Shown here in pieces: positions 28,671 through 62,946 of a stretch of DNA of 64,000 nucleotides (the stretch's first letter is position 1; each line of letters starts with the position of its first letter). A model generated the notes under the pieces. That model was not told where the DNA came from. It searched no databases and saw nothing but the letters and a program-made list of their open reading frames with translations. The stretch is from positions 62,001 through 126,000 of the IMG/VR virus record IMGVR_UViG_3300046559_001153. One strand, written 5' to 3'. The position numbers and the translations under genes were made by a program.

Positions 28671-29093
28671 ATGTCTGTTTATGACCAGATGATTGAAGAA
28701 GTGATCAAAATGCAACCGCTTCAAATGCAGAGCACATGGGCAGAATCACACAAGCGTCTGCATGGCGAGCTTTTCGCGTATTGCTCGCCTGGGCGAGGAT
28801 TTATGTCGTGTAGACCAGATAATAAAGTGTGCGGTTGTCTCACCCAGATCAGAGCTAGCCATTGGTTTGAAGACCCACCACGTAAGTTCGCGTGGACGGA
28901 CGAACTGACGAAGCTGATTGCCGAAGATGATCGTCTGCCGTCTGATATGGGTGACTTGGTAAGGAAATGGCCTGGCATGTCGGCCGATGAACGCCGAGCC
29001 ACGCTCATTCCTTTGGCCGAATGGCAAGAACGTCTGGATAAAGAACTCAATCGCACTACTCCGGTCTTCGGCCAGTTCAATAATCCGCATTAA
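28671..29093 (+). CDS. Hypothetical protein, paralog family A member 1
   Basis: CGCLT and AEWQERLDKE motifs shared with 29106, 44371, 48070. Confidence 0.75.
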   Translation: MSVYDQMIEEVIKMQPLQMQSTWAESHKRLHGELFAYCSPGRGFMSCRPDNKVCGCLTQIRASHWFEDPPRKFAWTDELTKLIAEDDRLPSDMGDLVRKWPGMSADERRATLIPLAEWQERLDKELNRTTPVFGQFNNPH

Positions 29094-29105
29094 CGAAAGG
29101 ATCTC

Positions 29106-29516
29106 ATGTCTGTTTACGACCAGATGATTGACGCAGTGATCAATATGCCCGCTCGCGAGGTCCAACGACTTTGGGGCAGTGGCTACAACGAGGGGGCTGG
29201 GTATCTCTTCAGTTACTGCTCCCCCGGCCGAGACGATGAGGACTGTTCTTTCGCTGGGGACTGTTCTTTCGAAAGGGCGTTCTGCGGTTGCCTGACCCAG
29301 GTCAAAGCATACGACGCAGTGGCTTACACAGAGGAATTAACGCGAGAGATCCGCGCTGATTGGCGCTTGCCAACAAGCATGGTCACGTTTTTACTGGGTT
29401 GGGACAAGTTGGTGCCGGACGAACGACGGACAAAGATGCAGCCGTTTGCTGAATGGCAAGAACGTCTGGATAAAGAGTTCAATCGTCCGACTCCGGTCTT
29501 CCAACTGGCCGAATAG
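29106..29516 (+). CDS. Hypothetical protein, paralog family A member 2 (tandem duplicate)
   Basis: Near-identical nucleotide 5' and 3' ends to 28671 gene. Confidence 0.75.
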   Translation: MSVYDQMIDAVINMPAREVQRLWGSGYNEGAGYLFSYCSPGRDDEDCSFAGDCSFERAFCGCLTQVKAYDAVAYTEELTREIRADWRLPTSMVTFLLGWDKLVPDERRTKMQPFAEWQERLDKEFNRPTPVFQLAE

Positions 29517-40573: not shown

Positions 40574-40632
40574 AACTGCGTCTTTTATTTGAGGATCATC
40601 CCTGGCGCCATTCACACTGAAGGAGTTACGAC

Positions 40633-40965
40633 ATGGCCAAGAAACAAGCCAAAAAGCCGACGAAGAAGACGTTCCCACGCGGCAATGAACTGCTGCGACA
40701 GGTGGTTAATCAGATCATAAAGCACCCTGAAACGTGGGATCAGTCCAACTGGCACTGCGGTAGCTCTCACTGCGTCGGCGGTTGGGCGCAGGTCATGGGA
40801 GGCAGAGAACCCGATGCCGCGAGAGTTTTTGAGGATGCCAGGAAACTGCTTGGATTGAGTGAGGGCCAGGCATCTTGGCTTTTTTACGGCGGTCGTACGT
40901 TCGAAGAAATTTACTGTTTTGCCGCGCAGCGATTGGAAAAGTCGTGCGCACTACCCCTACTGTGA
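40633..40965 (+). CDS. Hypothetical protein with W-H-C-x2-3-HC-x2-GW motif
   Basis: WDQSNWHCGSSHCVGGWA...ARKLLGL...ASWLF; motif shared with C-terminus of 62073. Confidence 0.7.
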   Translation: MAKKQAKKPTKKTFPRGNELLRQVVNQIIKHPETWDQSNWHCGSSHCVGGWAQVMGGREPDAARVFEDARKLLGLSEGQASWLFYGGRTFEEIYCFAAQRLEKSCALPLL

Positions 40966-57922: not shown

Positions 57923-58320
57923 CCGAGAGAGACGAGGCCATCCGTGGGATTGCTGTCAGCGTGTTCAAGCAGCACGACCTGTACACGCTGCACAGCCAGG
58001 TGATTGTGCATGGCAAGTCTATTCGCTTGGAGCTGTTTCCTCACGCGGTACGACATCAGCTGAGTGCCTTGTCGTTGGAGCTCGCGCCCGAGCTGAGGAT
58101 GTACCTCTTGGGGATTTACCTGCCGGAAGAGTGGTGGGGGATGGGCTTCGGTCAACAGTTGTACGACCTGGCTTGTGAGCTGGCGTCCGAGCTGGTGCTG
58201 GAAGACGTAGTGCAGTATCCGGTAGGGAAGACGGCTCGCGGAGAGCTGCGGCGAGATTACCTGCTTCGCCGCGGGTGGATGCCGTGTGAGGATGATCAAG
58301 TCCGCCGGTTTGTAATCTGA
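57910..58320 (+). CDS. GNAT-family acetyltransferase-like protein
   Basis: LLGIYLPEEWWGMGFGQQLY resembles acetyl-CoA-binding motif A; ...YLLRRGW. Confidence 0.55.
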   Translation: MVEMTERDEAIRGIAVSVFKQHDLYTLHSQVIVHGKSIRLELFPHAVRHQLSALSLELAPELRMYLLGIYLPEEWWGMGFGQQLYDLACELASELVLEDVVQYPVGKTARGELRRDYLLRRGWMPCEDDQVRRFVI

Positions 58321-58328
58321 CCGGCGGT

Positions 58329-58346
58329 TACCTTTTTAACAAGTTA
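58329..58346. promoter_or_regulatory. 18-bp palindromic motif copy 7 (TACCTTTTTAACAAGTTA)
   Basis: Intergenic, follows GC hairpin 58302-58327, precedes GAAAGG SD. Confidence 0.6.
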
Positions 58347-58776: not shown

Positions 58777-58971
58777 ATGAAAAACGTTCGACCTTTGACG
58801 CCGGATGAAATGGCGGCCATACCGGCTATTCAGGCCATAGTCGGCGGTGGAGACTTTGGCTACTGCATGGACTGTGATGGTCTGCGAACAATCGCGGGTG
58901 GAAAGTGTTCCGGTTGTCAGAGGCCATTAGCTAAGGCAATACCACCAGGAGGAGACAACCATCTTGATTGA
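58777..58971 (+). CDS. Small Zn-finger-like protein
   Basis: CMDC ... CSGC. Confidence 0.6.
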   Translation: MKNVRPLTPDEMAAIPAIQAIVGGGDFGYCMDCDGLRTIAGGKCSGCQRPLAKAIPPGGDNHLD

Positions 58972-59191
58972 CAATGCTGACCGTGACGAGATCGATGCGC
59001 AGATCCATGAAATTGCGCATCGATCTCTAATTGAAATGCACACCGCGGGTATCATGGACAGTCTGGCCAAAGTCGAGTTCAGCGTTCGAGAGAATCTGAT
59101 TCGACAGGTGCTCTCAGCGATTAAAGAAGAGTACTGCCTGCATTGCGGGTCGGATTCGGGTTCTTCGTGCCCCTGTCAAAACGACGATTGA
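58964..59191 (+). CDS. Hypothetical protein
   Basis: AGGAGG SD, TTG start; C-terminal YCLHCG...C.C.ND. Confidence 0.6.
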   Translation: MIDNADRDEIDAQIHEIAHRSLIEMHTAGIMDSLAKVEFSVRENLIRQVLSAIKEEYCLHCGSDSGSSCPCQNDD

Positions 59192-59203
59192 AAGGAGAGT
59201 TCA

Positions 59204-59524
59204 ATGAGTGATAAATTTGCTAACGATTTCATCCGTTGTCCACGCTGTCCACAGCCATCTAGTCGAGCCGGGCACAAGATCGGACCTACGCTGGTCTGTG
59301 TTGCACGCAATTACAGCGGTTGCAGTGTGGACATTGCTCAGTGCCCGGAATGCGGTAAGGCGTGGGAGATCAGCTACAAGGTGGCCGATATGACTCGAGT
59401 GCCGTCCTGGGATGGGCTAACTCGTCAACAACAGGAAGCAGCAGAGGCTGAGCAGAAAGAGCGCGATAAGCTCACGCGAAAGGTGGCGTTTGAAAAGTTG
59501 AAGACCGAGTTTGATCCGGATTAA
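59204..59524 (+). CDS. Zn-ribbon protein
   Basis: CPRC ... CPECGK. Confidence 0.65.
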   Translation: MSDKFANDFIRCPRCPQPSSRAGHKIGPTLVCVARNYSGCSVDIAQCPECGKAWEISYKVADMTRVPSWDGLTRQQQEAAEAEQKERDKLTRKVAFEKLKTEFDPD

Positions 59525-59584
59525 CCACTGACTGGCGGAGTGTAACCGAAGAACCTGGTCACTTTTTCTTCAAGAAAGGACATT

Positions 59585-60028
59585 ATGAGCGAAGGAACAA
59601 CCGTACATCCCGAACTGATGACCAAGCTGCACGAGCTGTTGGAACTAGCTCTGCACGACATGGAACTGTTCGAGCAACAGCCGGACTGCCACGTAGACAT
59701 GGATACCTGGCTTCGCCCTGGGTGGCCTGACGAGGGTGAGAATCCGAAGCACTGTTATGCTTGCTTGGCCGGCACGGTATGGCGAATGACGCTCGGGCTG
59801 GAAGACACACCATCCGCCACGGCTCCGAACTGGGCCAATGCCCTGAATCAGTTGCGATATGGTCGTGTCTCTGACGCCTACTTTTATCTTCCTGGTTGGG
59901 AAAAGGACGAAAACGACCGGGATGTCAGATACCTTAACAGAATCGTTTGGGATTACCATTCGTCACGGGTGCACTGGTGGAAGGCCATGAGGAAGCTGCT
60001 GGCCGATTTGAAAGAAGCCGACGTCTAA
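59585..60028 (+). CDS. Hypothetical protein, paralog family B member 4
   Basis: KLHELLELALHDM...CYACLAGTV...LNQLRYGRV...WWKAMRKLLADLKEADV. Confidence 0.75.
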   Translation: MSEGTTVHPELMTKLHELLELALHDMELFEQQPDCHVDMDTWLRPGWPDEGENPKHCYACLAGTVWRMTLGLEDTPSATAPNWANALNQLRYGRVSDAYFYLPGWEKDENDRDVRYLNRIVWDYHSSRVHWWKAMRKLLADLKEADV

Positions 60029-60042
60029 AAGAAAGAATCGTG

Positions 60043-61113
60043 ATGCAGTACAAAACTCTTGAAGAATTAGAAAAGCGGTTGAGTGAAGCGATTAACGATC
60101 CCCGGTCGTTGTTTGGCGCCGGGGATGATGTCGACACAACGCTGCAACGGATCCAGATCTTCTGCCATCCGGACAAGCATCCCTACCGTCGAGAGACGGC
60201 GACCAGGCTATTCGTCCTGGCTGGTCAACTGGCTGACAAGGCCCGCGGACCGGCCATGACAGTTACATCGCCCACCCGAGCGTACACGGTGGAACGGCGC
60301 CTGGCCTCAGGAGACGTGGCTGACGTCTACGTGGCGACAGGCAGGGACATCGTCAAACCTGTCGCCACCGTGACCAGGAACCGCATCCTGCTGCGTCCTG
60401 GGGTGTCGGAGCCCGATCAGACCTACACGATCAAGGTCAGCCGCATTCAGGGCGCCGAGGCCCTTCTGGACCGCGAGCAGAAGGTCCTGCTGGCGATTGA
60501 GAAGGCGGCGATCGATAAGAACCTGGACAACATGCGGTCCTATTACCCGACGTTGGTCGAGTCGTTCCCGGCCAAACAGCGGTTCCAGCGGCGGGTCAAC
60601 GTGTTCGTCCACCAGCCGGGCATGTTCACGTTCGAGCAGGTGGCTGATAAGCACCATCGTCTGGATGCCAGGCACAGTGTGTGGATCTTTAAGCGGTTGC
60701 TGACAGCCCTGGCGTTCGCCCACCAGCAGGGCATTGTCCATTCTGCCATCACGCCCGAGCACGTTATGATCAGGCCTGAGAATCACCAGGTCCAGATTAT
60801 TGGCTGGGGCCAGTCGGTTGCCGTGGGGCAGCCTATCAAGAGCTACCCGCTTAAGTACAAGCCGTACTACCCGGATGAGGCGTTCGCGAAGAGGCCGACC
60901 CACTCGGGGGCTGACATTCACATGGCGGCGTTCCTCGTCAGCCGGTGGACGGCATTTAAGGCGTCAGAAGAGTCGCTACGGATGTTTTTCAACGGCTGCA
61001 GGTGCGAAGGCCAGTGGCAGCGGCCGGTTGACGGGTTTGAGCTGTACGACGAGTTCGATCGCCTGGCTAAGCGTGTGTACGGGGATCCCAAATTCGTAGA
61101 ACTGAAAATGTGA
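60043..61113 (+). CDS. J-domain (HPD) / protein kinase-like fusion with degenerate catalytic motifs
   Basis: FCHPDKH...AT.LF; LASGDVADVY, IKVSR, RE.KVL, LAFAHQQGIVHSAITPEHVMI (HRD to HSA), IIGWG (DFG to GWG). Confidence 0.8.
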   Translation: MQYKTLEELEKRLSEAINDPRSLFGAGDDVDTTLQRIQIFCHPDKHPYRRETATRLFVLAGQLADKARGPAMTVTSPTRAYTVERRLASGDVADVYVATGRDIVKPVATVTRNRILLRPGVSEPDQTYTIKVSRIQGAEALLDREQKVLLAIEKAAIDKNLDNMRSYYPTLVESFPAKQRFQRRVNVFVHQPGMFTFEQVADKHHRLDARHSVWIFKRLLTALAFAHQQGIVHSAITPEHVMIRPENHQVQIIGWGQSVAVGQPIKSYPLKYKPYYPDEAFAKRPTHSGADIHMAAFLVSRWTAFKASEESLRMFFNGCRCEGQWQRPVDGFELYDEFDRLAKRVYGDPKFVELKM

Positions 61114-61117
61114 GACC

Positions 61118-61462
61118 ATGACTGAAATCTCGAATTCTCTGCAGTTGAAGATCATTGAAGCCGGTCTCATAGCTATCGTGAGCAAGGGCGGCAAACAAAT
61201 TCAACTGCGGGGCAACGGACGGACAATCACTGTGTTCCCGGATGGTGGCCGGGCCGGTCCATCGGTTTACGTCGGTGGCGTGACAGGCAGGTATCCAGGC
61301 ACTAAAAACATGACCGAGGAACAGGCTCTGGCTTTGGCGATCGAACTGGGCAGTGCTCGATGTACGGCGGCAAAGAAGCCAGTGTCTGGGAACTCGCTGG
61401 ACGAGATCAACGCAGAGCTGGCTATGGAACGGAATCGAAAAGATGAGGATCGCAAACAGTAG
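61118..61462 (+). CDS. Hypothetical protein
   Basis: ORF in array. Confidence 0.6.
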   Translation: MTEISNSLQLKIIEAGLIAIVSKGGKQIQLRGNGRTITVFPDGGRAGPSVYVGGVTGRYPGTKNMTEEQALALAIELGSARCTAAKKPVSGNSLDEINAELAMERNRKDEDRKQ

Positions 61463-61514
61463 GACCAATTGATAAGTATGAAGTCATCCGCGTACAGCGA
61501 GCAGGAGAAACGAT

Positions 61515-61892
61515 ATGACCGAATCGAAAGACGATATGTCTCTACTTGATCTTCTCAGAACGCCTGTCTCTGAGATTGAAAAAGCCGAAATTGCTGAAGT
61601 AATCGCAGCGGCAATGACCCACCCGGACGGTTCGAAAAACATGACAGCCTTGGCTATCCGCAGGCTCATGTTCCAGCATGGAGAACTCCAACAGCAACTC
61701 GCAGCCGTGACGAGAGAGCGTGACGATGCGGTTGCTGCTTATCGCGTCCTGGAAGCAGAAGGCAACAGGTGCATCGACGAATATATTTCTGGCAAGCTGA
61801 CGCAGTTGCGGGTCTGGTCAGACCGAATGGCGACGGCAATTGCCAAATCCCGCAACTCCCTGCCAGCCCCGACCGACAGGAGCGGAGCGTAA
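61515..61892 (+). CDS. Hypothetical coiled-coil protein
   Basis: AGGAGA SD; LQQQLAAVTRERDDA. Confidence 0.65.
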   Translation: MTESKDDMSLLDLLRTPVSEIEKAEIAEVIAAAMTHPDGSKNMTALAIRRLMFQHGELQQQLAAVTRERDDAVAAYRVLEAEGNRCIDEYISGKLTQLRVWSDRMATAIAKSRNSLPAPTDRSGA

Positions 61893-62039
61893 AGATGGGC
61901 ATAGCCTTTTTGAACATCTTTGGGAACTGGCGTGTACCGGATGGAAGGCTTTGCACTTTAATTGCCGACACATGGCCAGTTTTTAGCGACACCACTGTTT
62001 CCGATCTGATGTTGGCAGGATTTTGAGACCAACAATCGC

Positions 62040-62057
62040 GTTGACTGACCACTGACC
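62040..62057. repeat. 18-bp direct repeat, left copy (GTTGACTGACCACTGACC)
   Basis: Identical to 62733-62750. Confidence 0.85.
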
Positions 62058-62072
62058 ACGAAAGGAACCACC

Positions 62073-62741
62073 ATGGCAATCCGAAATGAAAACGGAATCC
62101 TGTATGATGACAGAAACAACTCCGCGAGCATTGAGTATTGGGGCAGCGAGGAAGCGGCGCGAAAGGCGCTAGAGTCATTGGTGAACTGCTCCGACTGCTC
62201 CCGCTGCTCCGGCTGCTCCGACTGCTCCCGCTGCTCCGGCTGCTCCGACTGCTCCCGCTGCTCCGACTGCTCCCGCTGCTCCGACTGCTCCCGCTGCTCC
62301 GACTGCTCCGACTGCTCCCGCTGCTCCGACTGCTCCCGCTGCTCCGACTGCTCCGGCTGCTCCGACTGCTCCCGCTGCTCCGACTGCTCCCGCTGCTACG
62401 ACTGCTCCCGCTGCTCCGGCTGCTCCCGCATAGTGCCTCAAAAAGTCACTATTGAAATTCCATTTATCACCGAAATCCACAAGACAATCTATGCCGCAGT
62501 CTCACAGCCAAAAGCTCTGAACATGAGCGACTGGCACACGTGCGAGACGACGCATTGCCGGGCTGGATGGGTCGTGACGCTCGCGGGCGAGGCGGGTAAG
62601 AAATTGGAGAAACAAACGTCGCCACTGTTCGCAGCCCAACAAATCTACAAAGCCAGCGGGTATGAGATTTCGCCTGTGCGGTTCTTCGACTCGAACGAGG
62701 AAGCGATGGCCGATATGAAGCGTCTGGCGGAAGTTGACTGA
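62073..62741 (+). CDS. (Cys-Ser-X)27 repeat protein with C-terminal WH-C-x2-HC-x-AGW domain
   Basis: GAAAGGA SD; CSDCSRCSG... then ALNMSDWHTCETTHCRAGW. Confidence 0.8.
   Translation: MAIRNENGILYDDRNNSASIEYWGSEEAARKALESLVNCSDCSRCSGCSDCSRCSGCSDCSRCSDCSRCSDCSRCSDCSDCSRCSDCSRCSDCSGCSDCSRCSDCSRCYDCSRCSGCSRIVPQKVTIEIPFITEIHKTIYAAVSQPKALNMSDWHTCETTHCRAGWVVTLAGEAGKKLEKQTSPLFAAQQIYKASGYEISPVRFFDSNEEAMADMKRLAEVD
62187..62429. repeat. 9-bp tandem repeat, 27 units (TGCTCC-GAC/CGC/GGC)
   Basis: Counted unit by unit; one TGCTACGAC variant. Confidence 0.95.
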
Positions 62742-62750
62742 CCACTGACC
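62733..62750. repeat. 18-bp direct repeat, right copy
   Basis: Identical to 62040-62057; overlaps the stop region of the 62073 gene. Confidence 0.85.
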
Positions 62751-62769
62751 CGAGAGAGGAGAGAGGGAT

Positions 62770-62946
62770 ATGCTCCAGAAAATTGAAATCGAAGACGTCA
62801 GCGATTGCGAATCGTGCACCGCCCGCCATAAGGGGATACTGGAGTTTCTGGCTACAACGAAAGCGAAAGTCTTGACGGACGTGATTTGCAGCGAATGCGG
62901 GCGCGAGACTCATATATTTGTGGCCGACGAAAGCGAAAGGGGATGA
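62770..62946 (+). CDS. Small Zn-binding protein (58 aa)
   Basis: CESC ... CSECG; GAGGG SD; ATGA coupling. Confidence 0.55.
   Translation: MLQKIEIEDVSDCESCTARHKGILEFLATTKAKVLTDVICSECGRETHIFVADESERG

What the first reader, a model, noticed from the sequence alone, without database searches (positions are those of the whole stretch)
62040..62750. Perfect 18-bp direct repeats exactly flank the Cys-repeat gene
GTTGACTGACCACTGACC occurs before the SD and again over the stop region of the 62073 gene, each followed by a purine-rich SD for the next gene. Recombination between them would cleanly excise or amplify one gene plus its SD, a simple cassette-shuffling mechanism. A partial ACCACTGAC also occurs intergenically at 59524.
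Basis: partly seen in the sequence, partly recalled or inferred. Interest (0 to 1): 0.6.

Follow-up and report, generated by a model that had tools for sequence, protein, structure and literature searches.

The report
Eighteen-base repeat brackets phage gene
A perfect 18-base repeat really does bracket one accessory gene of a 224-kb phage, but it looks like a leftover junction from how the gene was installed or duplicated: about 22-25 assembled contigs of this phage from at least 15 samples show no loss or gain of the gene at these repeats.

Summary
GTTGACTGACCACTGACC occurs exactly twice in the 224,270-bp phage genome, at window 62040-62057 and 62733-62750, 693 bp apart. Copy 1 lies 15 nt before the ATG of the Cys-repeat gene (X, 62073-62741). 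Copy 2 covers its last two codons and its stop. A purine-rich ribosome-binding site follows each copy. Chance is very unlikely: 0 of 3000 random intervals reached 15 nt. Similarity stops sharply at the 18 bp. The repeat is not a promoter, terminator, hairpin, known RNA family or genome-wide motif. The phage's real dispersed motif is a different palindrome.

X belongs to a widespread phage family (phrog_31265/15341). No activity is visible. In 22-25 contigs from at least 15 samples the gene is always present. Seven contigs span both copies, and they differ only in the length of the internal CSx array. Reads could not be examined.

Best reading (confidence about 0.5): a recombination or duplication scar that marks a one-gene module, and a passive substrate for rare deletion or duplication. 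Interest is low to moderate.

The parts
62040..62057 (+). Repeat copy 1 (R1), GTTG + 2 x ACTGACC. It is intergenic, 13 nt after the stop of the 43-aa ORF and 15 nt before the ATG of gene X. It carries a TGA in all three frames.
62060..62066 (+). GAAAGGA Shine-Dalgarno of gene X. The same SD word precedes the closest homologue (L003) and is enriched in this phage's intergenic DNA.
62073..62741 (+). Gene X, 222 aa. It has an N-terminal domain, a CSx triplet array and a conserved C-terminal domain with the WHTCETTHCRAGW motif. It belongs to phrog_15341/phrog_31265; its function is unknown.
62186..62429 (+). Internal tandem array (period 9/18/27 nt) encoding CS[DRG] triplets. This is the only part of the locus that differs between assemblies.
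62733..62750 (+). Repeat copy 2 (R2). Its first 9 nt encode Val-Asp-stop of X, and its last 9 nt are intergenic.
62752..62768 (+). Purine-rich SD region of the downstream 58-aa zinc-ribbon-like gene.
62770..62946 (+). Downstream 58-aa gene. It would be joined to the upstream ORF by an R1 x R2 deletion.
61895..62026 (+). Upstream 43-aa ORF, called in all population contigs. It is the left neighbour of R1.

Best explanation
The two 18-mers are a sharp-edged local duplication that marks the borders of a one-gene accessory module (its own SD plus gene X). They are most likely a junction scar from the event that installed or duplicated the module. Two routes would give this. In the first, a replication or recombination template switch copies the gene in and then re-copies 18 nt of the target. 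In the second, a tandem duplication of SD + X + 9 nt is followed by loss of the upstream copy, leaving only its last 18 nt. The repeat has no sequence-specific machinery of its own. Today it is a passive 18-bp homology that could occasionally delete or duplicate the module by short-homology recombination or slippage. Its three-frame TGA block keeps either outcome translationally clean. What is shown: the repeat is real, non-random, unique, sharply bounded and structureless, and the gene is a patchily distributed family member. What is inferred: the origin as a scar, and the capacity for rare recombination.
For: There are exactly two copies in the genome, and they are far beyond chance. Identity drops from 18/18 to random at both edges, as expected for a junction duplication and not for decayed paralogy or a graded regulatory region. 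There is no promoter, terminator, RNA fold, inverted repeat or Rfam hit. The heptamer is not enriched in intergenic DNA; the phage's real intergenic motif is a different palindrome. X is the only gene in this 6-kb stretch with relatives elsewhere: 153 IMG/VR contigs, plus Ralstonia and Flavobacterium phages. In contrast, the kinase neighbour found no IMG/VR relative, and the 125-aa and 517-aa neighbours found nothing beyond this phage in the word-based protein search. Among 32 loci related to the upstream gene of a homologue, none carries X. The family shows tandem copies with repeated spacers (L021, L070) and single copies bracketed by 16-nt repeats (L033, L044). Flanking words of 12 nt or more occur in 6/60 family genes against 17/840 other genes and 3/3000 random intervals. 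This same genome holds a tandem paralogue pair that keeps identical end patches. The C-terminus ...RLAEVD-stop has the family-typical length (L004 ...RLALTD-stop), so R2 fits as the native gene end.
Against: No related phage with an empty or differently filled site was found, so the insertion or duplication event is inferred and not observed. The non-array parts of X have the same GC and GC3 as their neighbours, so there is no compositional sign of recent arrival. Perfect 18/18 identity could equally reflect selection on a functional element. No remnant of a second X copy lies upstream of R1, so the tandem-duplication route needs a precise second deletion. The phage shows no RecA, RecT, ERF, tyrosine or serine recombinase by Pfam, so any recombination would depend on the host or on replication errors.
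Confidence: 0.5

Rival explanations
1. Active cassette shuffling. The two copies recombine often enough to matter, excising X as a circle or deletion, or amplifying it, so that the repeat pair works as a minimal mobile-cassette border like a PeSL pair.
For: The geometry gives clean products. PeSL pairs in T4-type phages do exactly this and make mini-circles. Homologous loci show the R-X-R-X-R pattern expected from unequal exchange (L021). In L033 and L044 the two flanking copies match each other better than their counterparts in the other phage, which hints at homogenisation.
Against: There are only two copies and no other cassette in the genome uses them. None of the 22-25 contigs from at least 15 samples shows an empty site or a tandem copy, while the internal array varies in 4 of the 7 contigs that span both copies. 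No phage recombinase was detected. 18 bp is short for efficient homologous exchange (general knowledge).
Confidence: 0.2
2. A functional cis element on the mRNA. The 18-mer, unstructured, CA-rich and closing all three frames, sits just 5' of two ribosome-binding sites. It would act as a translational insulator, standby or enhancer site, or as the operator of an RNA-binding regulator that co-controls X and the 58-aa gene.
For: Both copies hold the same position, 3-4 nt before a purine-rich SD. There is a TGA in every frame; a rough estimate puts the chance of this in a random 18-mer at about 1%. The copies are identical although X shows no compositional sign of recent arrival. The region is predicted to be unstructured, as standby sites are.
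Against: Only two of roughly 280 genes have it, and its heptamer is not enriched upstream of genes. Half of copy 2 is coding. Conservation cannot be tested because all available contigs are clonal. The three-frame stop follows automatically from a heptamer that contains TGA.
Confidence: 0.15
3. Target-site duplication or att core left by a dedicated mobile element, either a transposon/MITE-like element or a site-specific integrating element.
For: Sharp-edged perfect direct repeats that bracket a discrete insert are the classical signature of such elements.
Against: There are no terminal inverted repeats inside the duplication. The 675-bp interior holds only X and its SD, with no transposase. 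The phage has no tyrosine or serine recombinase. 18 bp exceeds the usual 2-14-bp TSD range (general knowledge). Flanking repeats at homologous loci have unrelated sequences, and some belong to multi-copy intergenic cassettes.
Confidence: 0.08
4. Chance coincidence of a low-complexity heptamer-based word.
For: The word is two heptamers. The same 18-mer occurs in 53 unrelated metagenome contigs, often inside heptamer arrays. Genome-wide, about 0.4 chance 18-mer pairs are expected (own estimate), and one apparently meaningless pair exists at genome positions 28992 and 215016.
Against: For a pair within 1 kb the expectation is about 0.003 (own estimate). 0 of 3000 random intervals and 0 of 100 shuffles reached it. 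Both copies sit at equivalent gene-boundary positions.
Confidence: 0.02

Closest known systems
PeSL (promoter-early stem-loop) cassettes of T4-type phages (Arbiol et al. 2010, PMC2839356; Comeau et al. 2014, PMC4122927)
   Same: These are short repeated sequences that lie between the stop codon of one gene and the SD/start of the next. They bracket small non-essential genes of unknown function, and recombination between neighbouring copies deletes, swaps or circularises single genes.
   Different: PeSLs carry a sigma70-like promoter plus a terminator stem-loop and occur about 50 times per genome in hyperplastic regions, and their activity was shown by PCR of mini-circles. The 18-mer here has no promoter, no stem-loop and only two copies, and no recombination product was seen.
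Multi-copy intergenic regulatory cassettes that flank small genes in other phages of this data set (e.g. L065, L040)
   Same: Exact words of 12-29 nt are shared between the upstream region and the stop region of one small gene, and they often include the stop, spacer and SD.
   Different: Those words recur 3-5 times per locus in front of many genes, so they are promoter/RBS modules. The 18-mer here is a unique pair and excludes the SD.
Tandem gene duplications with retained boundary sequence (L021 and L070 homologues; paralogue pair at window 28671-29516)
   Same: The same gene family, and the same genome, show duplicated units of gene plus spacer whose end sequences stay identical.
   Different: Here only one gene copy exists, and only 18 nt of a putative second unit remain.
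Morons of lambdoid phages (general knowledge)
   Same: A single accessory gene inserted between resident genes and distributed patchily among unrelated phages.
   Different: Classical morons bring their own promoter and terminator; none was detected here. X appears to ride in an operon that starts at the palindrome at window 58329.
Target-site duplications and att cores of mobile elements (general knowledge)
   Same: Perfect direct repeats with sharp edges bracket a discrete insert.
   Different: There are no terminal inverted repeats, no transposase or integrase, and the duplication is unusually long.

Membership tests
PeSL cassette (T4-type phages) | Contains a sigma70-like early promoter | tested here: not met
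   The consensus scan finds no promoter-like site at either copy. TTGACT is present, but no -10 hexamer lies 16-18 nt downstream (sequence).
PeSL cassette (T4-type phages) | Contains a stable stem-loop (terminator/attenuator) | tested here: not met
   RNA folds of both contexts are no better than shuffles (z +0.5 and +0.8). There are no inverted repeats in 61950-62850.
PeSL cassette (T4-type phages) | Many copies per genome, concentrated in hyperplastic regions | tested here: not met
   There are two copies in 224 kb even with 2 mismatches, and the heptamer is not enriched in intergenic DNA.
PeSL cassette (T4-type phages) | Lies between an upstream stop codon and a downstream SD/start, bracketing ORFans | tested here: met
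PeSL cassette (T4-type phages) | Recombination products (indels between relatives, mini-circles) | tested here: inconclusive
   No empty site or tandem copy appears in 22-25 assembled contigs. Assemblies hide rare variants, and reads were not available.
Integron gene cassette | attC imperfect inverted repeat at the 3' end and an integron integrase | tested here: not met
   There is no inverted repeat or fold and no tyrosine recombinase in the phage.
IS/MITE-type element with target-site duplication | Terminal inverted repeats just inside the direct repeats; transposase (autonomous forms) | tested here: not met
   No inverted repeats. The interior holds only X.
Site-specific integrating element (att core repeats) | Cognate tyrosine or serine recombinase | tested here: not met
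   PF00589 and PF00239 are absent from the complete phage genome. A host enzyme cannot be excluded.
Moron | Own promoter and terminator flanking the inserted gene | tested here: not met
   (consensus scan only; phage-specific promoters are not covered)
Moron | Patchy distribution among otherwise unrelated phages | tested here: met
Gene X: PHROG families phrog_31265 / phrog_15341 | Significant profile match | tested here: met
   E 2.9e-26 (residues 129-220) and 8.2e-24 (residues 11-157). 18 invariant columns in an alignment of 41 sequences, including W154, H155, C157, H161, C162, R163, G165 and W166.
Gene X: pentapeptide-repeat proteins (name given to GenBank homologues) | A(D/N)LxX pentapeptide repeats / Pfam pentapeptide match | tested here: not met
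   X has no Pfam hit and carries CSx triplets instead. Only some relatives have ADLRG-type repeats in front of the shared C-domain.

The most novel reading that the evidence does not exclude
The repeat pair is one instance of a general, undescribed 'copy-in with boundary duplication' route. By this route early accessory genes of the family hop between unrelated phages, each time duplicating the stop/spacer/initiation region of the target. The duplicated borders then stay homogenised and drive tandem amplification and loss. The within-genome co-variation of the flanking repeats in L033 and L044, and the R-X-R-X-R layout in L021, would be footprints of that cycle.
Probability: 0.12. Interest if true: 0.6.

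Novelty: new member of a known kind. Interest (0 to 1): 0.3.

Why it matters
If the pair were active, it would be about the smallest gene-shuffling device known in a phage: 18 bp with no promoter, terminator or enzyme. It would also show how single early genes are traded among unrelated phages. As the evidence stands, it is a well-defined junction scar, useful as a marker of where a one-gene module begins and ends in a jumbo phage made mostly of ORFans. The gene it brackets may be the more rewarding object. It belongs to a widespread phage family, found in the early region of a cultured Ralstonia phage. The family has an invariant H-x-C...H-C motif and no structural match in the PDB searches run here. 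Its repeat array, Cys-Ser triplets or pentapeptides, changes length between samples.

Tried and rejected
I did not try to obtain reads another way.

2. Exact scans for the 18-mer. IMG/VR gave 0 hits. Metagenome contigs gave 53 hits (about 35 distinct), roughly 2-3 times my own rough chance estimate. They often lie inside heptamer arrays or hairpins, and none is related to the phage by blastn or tblastx. A 38-nt match to three lake contigs (L089, L111, L131) has no supporting protein similarity and is treated as chance.

3. Relatives of the neighbouring genes, sought for an empty site. The kinase has no IMG/VR relative. The 125-aa gene found only itself. The 517-aa gene found nothing. No relative of this phage was available.

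4. Empty site for a homologous locus (L044). 32 loci related to its upstream gene were too divergent (76% identity or less), and none carried X.

5. Remnant of a second X copy upstream of R1. A family HMM against the six-frame genome found none, and flank alignments were no better than shuffles.

6. Promoter, terminator, RNA structure, Rfam family and inverted repeats were all negative.

7. Compositional foreignness of X was not seen.

8. Function of X. There was no Pfam hit. The AF2 model is good for both end domains, but Foldseek against PDB gave E above 2 and VIA-align gave Z of 3.4 or less. The ESM Atlas returned only viral 'hypothetical protein' clusters.

9. Phage-encoded recombinases (RecA, RecT, ERF, tyrosine, serine) were not found.

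10. The idea that the 147-aa protein at 59585-60028 is a paralogue of the X C-domain was not supported by the HMM.

Full report
SETTING. The window is bases 62001-126000 of a 224,270-bp IMG/VR virus record with 127-bp direct terminal repeats, rated 100% complete, so this is a jumbo phage. GC content is 55.5%. Most genes lie on the + strand. The finding sits in a run of small + strand genes. These are a 147-aa ORF, a protein-kinase-like gene (Pfam Pkinase 1.5e-06, phrog_3043 8.7e-30), 114-aa, 125-aa and 43-aa ORFs, the Cys-repeat gene X (62073-62741), a 58-aa zinc-ribbon-like ORF, and further small ORFs.

OBSERVATION. GTTGACTGACCACTGACC is present, exact, at 62040-62057 (R1) and 62733-62750 (R2).
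- With up to 3 mismatches the window holds only these two. Shuffles give a mean of 0.10 matches and never two.
- With up to 2 mismatches the whole genome holds only these two, both on the + strand.
- The genome has very few other exact non-tandem repeats of 18 nt or more: the terminal repeat, copies of a dispersed palindrome, a 26-mer shared by two tandem paralogues, and two isolated pairs.
- I compared the 90 nt around a start with the 110 nt around the corresponding stop. 0 of 3000 random intervals of this genome reached 15 nt. Of 259 ORF-defined genes, only X exceeded 14.
- R1 ends 15 nt before the ATG of X and is followed by GAAAGGA. R2 begins 6 nt before the stop codon of X, so its first 9 nt read Val-Asp-TGA. 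A purine run follows it, 19 nt before the next ATG.
- The period is 693 bp.
- Identity falls from 18/18 to background at both edges. Local alignments of 180 nt upstream and 120 nt downstream score no better than shuffles.
- The 18-mer is GTTG plus two ACTGACC heptamers and carries a TGA in each reading frame.
I treat it as chance.

WHAT THE REPEAT IS NOT.
- No sigma70-like promoter or intrinsic terminator maps to either copy.
- Neither context folds better than shuffled sequence.
- There are no inverted repeats in 61950-62850 and no Rfam family.
- Its heptamers are not enriched in intergenic DNA.
- The motif that is enriched there is a different one. The palindrome TAACTTTTYRAAAAGTTA has at least 23 copies, typically a few bases upstream of an SD and ATG. 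One lies at window 58329-58346, directly after a hairpin at 58302-58327.

THE GENE INSIDE. X (222 aa) has no Pfam hit. It matches phrog_31265 (C-terminal domain, 2.9e-26) and phrog_15341 (N-terminal part, 8.2e-24).
- Its C-terminal 103 residues find 153 IMG/VR contigs, with up to 74% identity, in 40-70-kb phages.
- In GenBank they find Ralstonia Autographiviridae and Flavobacterium phage FL-1, where the gene is labelled 'putative pentapeptide repeat protein'. In Ralstonia phage RsoP1IDN it is gene 4, in the early region ahead of primase and helicase.
- Family members share a short N-terminal domain and the C-terminal domain with invariant W-H-x-C-x-T-T-H-C-R-x-G-W. Between these they carry either CSx triplet arrays or A(D/N)LxG pentapeptide arrays.
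- The AlphaFold model is confident for both end domains and disordered for the array. It has no convincing PDB neighbour: Foldseek E above 2, VIA-align Z of 3.4 or less. The ESM Atlas returns only viral hypothetical clusters.
- The function is unknown. An early host-takeover or anti-defence role is only an inference from gene position.
- X is the only part of this 6-kb stretch with DNA similarity to any GenBank phage. Its neighbours have no detectable relatives. X is therefore a patchily distributed accessory gene among ORFans.
- Its non-array parts have the same GC and GC3 as the neighbours, so there is no sign of a very recent foreign origin.

POPULATION DATA. Exact-protein look-ups of the two small flanking genes returned 22 and 24-25 contigs from at least 15 JGI and SRA samples.
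- Outside the array these contigs are essentially identical to the window, 99.9-100% with at most 3 mismatches in any one contig.
- Seven contigs, including the window's own record, span both copies. R1 and R2 are perfect in all seven, and their spacing is 576, 621, 657, 693 (three times) and 729 bp.
- The spacing differences are in-frame changes in the number of CSx triplets, giving X proteins of 183-234 aa.
- No contig joins the 43-aa gene directly to the 58-aa gene, and none has two X copies. The rows shown plus the 'similar places not shown' account for all contigs.
- At the level of assembled consensus, therefore, there is no presence/absence variation at the repeat. The internal array is the recombination hot spot, with the caveat that short-read assembly can collapse such arrays.
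- Reads, which could reveal rare junctions, were not available.

FAMILY-LEVEL CONTEXT. Around 60 distinct homologues, the longest exact word shared between the upstream and stop regions is 12 nt or more in six. The same measure gives 17 of 840 for other genes of the same loci and 3 of 3000 for random intervals. Fisher's exact test gives p = 0.003, or 0.04 without the tandem cases.
- Two of the six are tandem arrays. L021 has two copies and a near-identical spacer between the copies and after the second, with a diverged version before the first. L070 has three copies.
- L033 and L044 carry a 16-nt repeat that includes the SD, and in L033 also the ATG, before X and before the next gene. In each phage the two copies match each other better than they match their counterparts in the other phage.
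- This shows that genes of this family do get duplicated together with their boundary sequence, and that boundary repeats can be kept alike.
- Many of the 'control' cases turned out to be multi-copy intergenic cassettes that precede several genes. That is the phenomenon described as PeSLs in T4-type phages, where recombination between neighbouring cassettes deletes, swaps or circularises single ORFans.
- The same jumbo phage also holds a tandem paralogue pair (window 28671-29516) whose initiation regions and 3' ends are near-identical while the centres have diverged.

INTERPRETATION. The pair is a real, unique, sharp-edged duplication placed at the two borders of SD + X. I read it as a junction scar. 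Two routes fit.
- Route (a), a one-step template switch. Replication leaves the resident template after the 18-mer, copies SD + X from another molecule, and resumes upstream of the 18-mer, copying it a second time. In this case the 18-mer belonged to the target, and its three-frame stop supplies the end of X.
- Route (b), tandem duplication followed by deletion. The unit 62058-62750 (SD + X + 9 nt) is duplicated in tandem, as seen in L021 and L070, and a later deletion removes all but the last 18 nt of the upstream unit.
- The family-typical length of the C-terminus (RLAEVD-stop here, RLALTD-stop in L004) mildly favours (b), with R2 as the native gene end. The absence of any further remnant and parsimony mildly favour (a). 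I cannot decide between them.
- In either case the pair is now an 18-bp homology.
- The phage shows no RecA, RecT, ERF, tyrosine or serine recombinase, and no product is visible in about two dozen assemblies.

RIVALS.
- Active shuffling (0.2). This is supported only by analogy and by the homologous loci.
- A translational or regulatory cis element shared by X and the 58-aa gene (0.15). It is suggested by the identical placement before two SDs, the three-frame stop and the perfect identity. It is weakened by there being only two copies and no way to test conservation.
- Target-site duplication by a dedicated element (0.08). It lacks terminal inverted repeats and any enzyme.
- Chance (0.02).

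COMPARISON AND NOVELTY. Functionally the closest system is the PeSL pair. Membership fails on three defining features: promoter, stem-loop and multiplicity. The pair is best filed as another example of short boundary repeats bracketing an accessory gene in a plastic region of a phage genome, in an unusually minimal two-copy form. Interest is low to moderate (0.3).

LIMITS. All available contigs of this phage are clonal, so neither selection on the repeat nor its age can be estimated. Assemblies cannot exclude rare excision or amplification. Gene starts in the control analyses come from a simple longest-ORF rule.

Noticed in passing
window 62186-62429 (compare L138, L139, L141, L146): The CSx triplet array of gene X differs in length between samples. 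R1-R2 spacing is 576, 621, 657, 693 and 729 bp, always in frame, giving proteins of 183-234 aa, while the rest of the locus is essentially identical. This may be a real variable-number repeat in a phage early-type protein, or short-read assembly collapse.
   Followed up: partly
window 62073-62741; loci L003-L082: X belongs to a large phage family with a conserved N-terminal domain and a C-terminal domain carrying invariant W-H-x-C-x-T-T-H-C-R-x-G-W. Between the two domains sit either Cys-Ser-x triplets or pentapeptide repeats. No Pfam family or PDB fold match was found. In Ralstonia phage RsoP1IDN the homologue lies in the early region.
   Followed up: partly
window 58329-58346 (plus at least 22 more genome-wide, e.g. 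window 1084, 13522, 17224, 34770, 47303): A dispersed palindrome, TAACTTTTYRAAAAGTTA, sits a few bases upstream of an SD and ATG in many intergenic regions. The copy at 58329 directly follows a GC-rich hairpin (58302-58327). It is probably the phage's own promoter or operator motif, resembling a terminator-promoter cassette.
   Followed up: partly
window 28671-29516: Two tandem paralogous genes (140 and 136 aa) have near-identical initiation regions/N-termini and 3' ends, including a 26-nt exact repeat 432 bp apart. Their centres have diverged, which suggests gene conversion or mosaic exchange at gene ends.
   Followed up: partly
window 40621-40962: A weak second member of the X C-domain family (HMM E 9.5e-06) carries W-H-C-x-x-x-H-C-x-G-G-W and has no repeat array.
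   Followed up: no
L033 4651-5342 and L044 4573-5321: In two related phages the X homologue is bracketed by a 16-nt exact repeat covering the SD (plus the ATG in L033, or the stop codon in L044). The two copies within a phage match each other better than they match the equivalent copies in the other phage, a hint of concerted evolution of gene-boundary repeats.
   Followed up: partly
L021 4443-6239; L070 123-2418: Homologues of X occur as two and three tandem copies, with the spacer (stop + SD) repeated between and after the copies.
   Followed up: partly
L089, L111, L131 (lake metagenome contigs, one of 275,987 bp): A 38-nt stretch (GAGACCAACA, about 7 nt, the 18-mer, then AC) matches the R1 context at 89-92% identity, although these contigs share no protein similarity with the phage. 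This is probably chance plus heptamer low complexity, but a link to the host was not excluded.
   Followed up: partly
window 62433-62741 versus 62073-62741: The automatic gene calls on the public contigs start X at 62433 (102 aa) and sometimes add a spurious 105-aa ORF in another frame across the array. Family homology of the N-terminal domain shows that the true ORF starts at 62073.
   Followed up: yes
genome positions 175062 and 194769 (outside the window): A 20-nt exact repeat, CCTTTTTTTAGCTATCAGCC, occurs twice 19.7 kb apart and is unexplained.
   Followed up: no
L147 (window 58895-62241): One population contig has 3 mismatches to the window, and the 147-aa gene (59585-60028) is called as 105 aa there, a possible truncating variant.
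   Followed up: no
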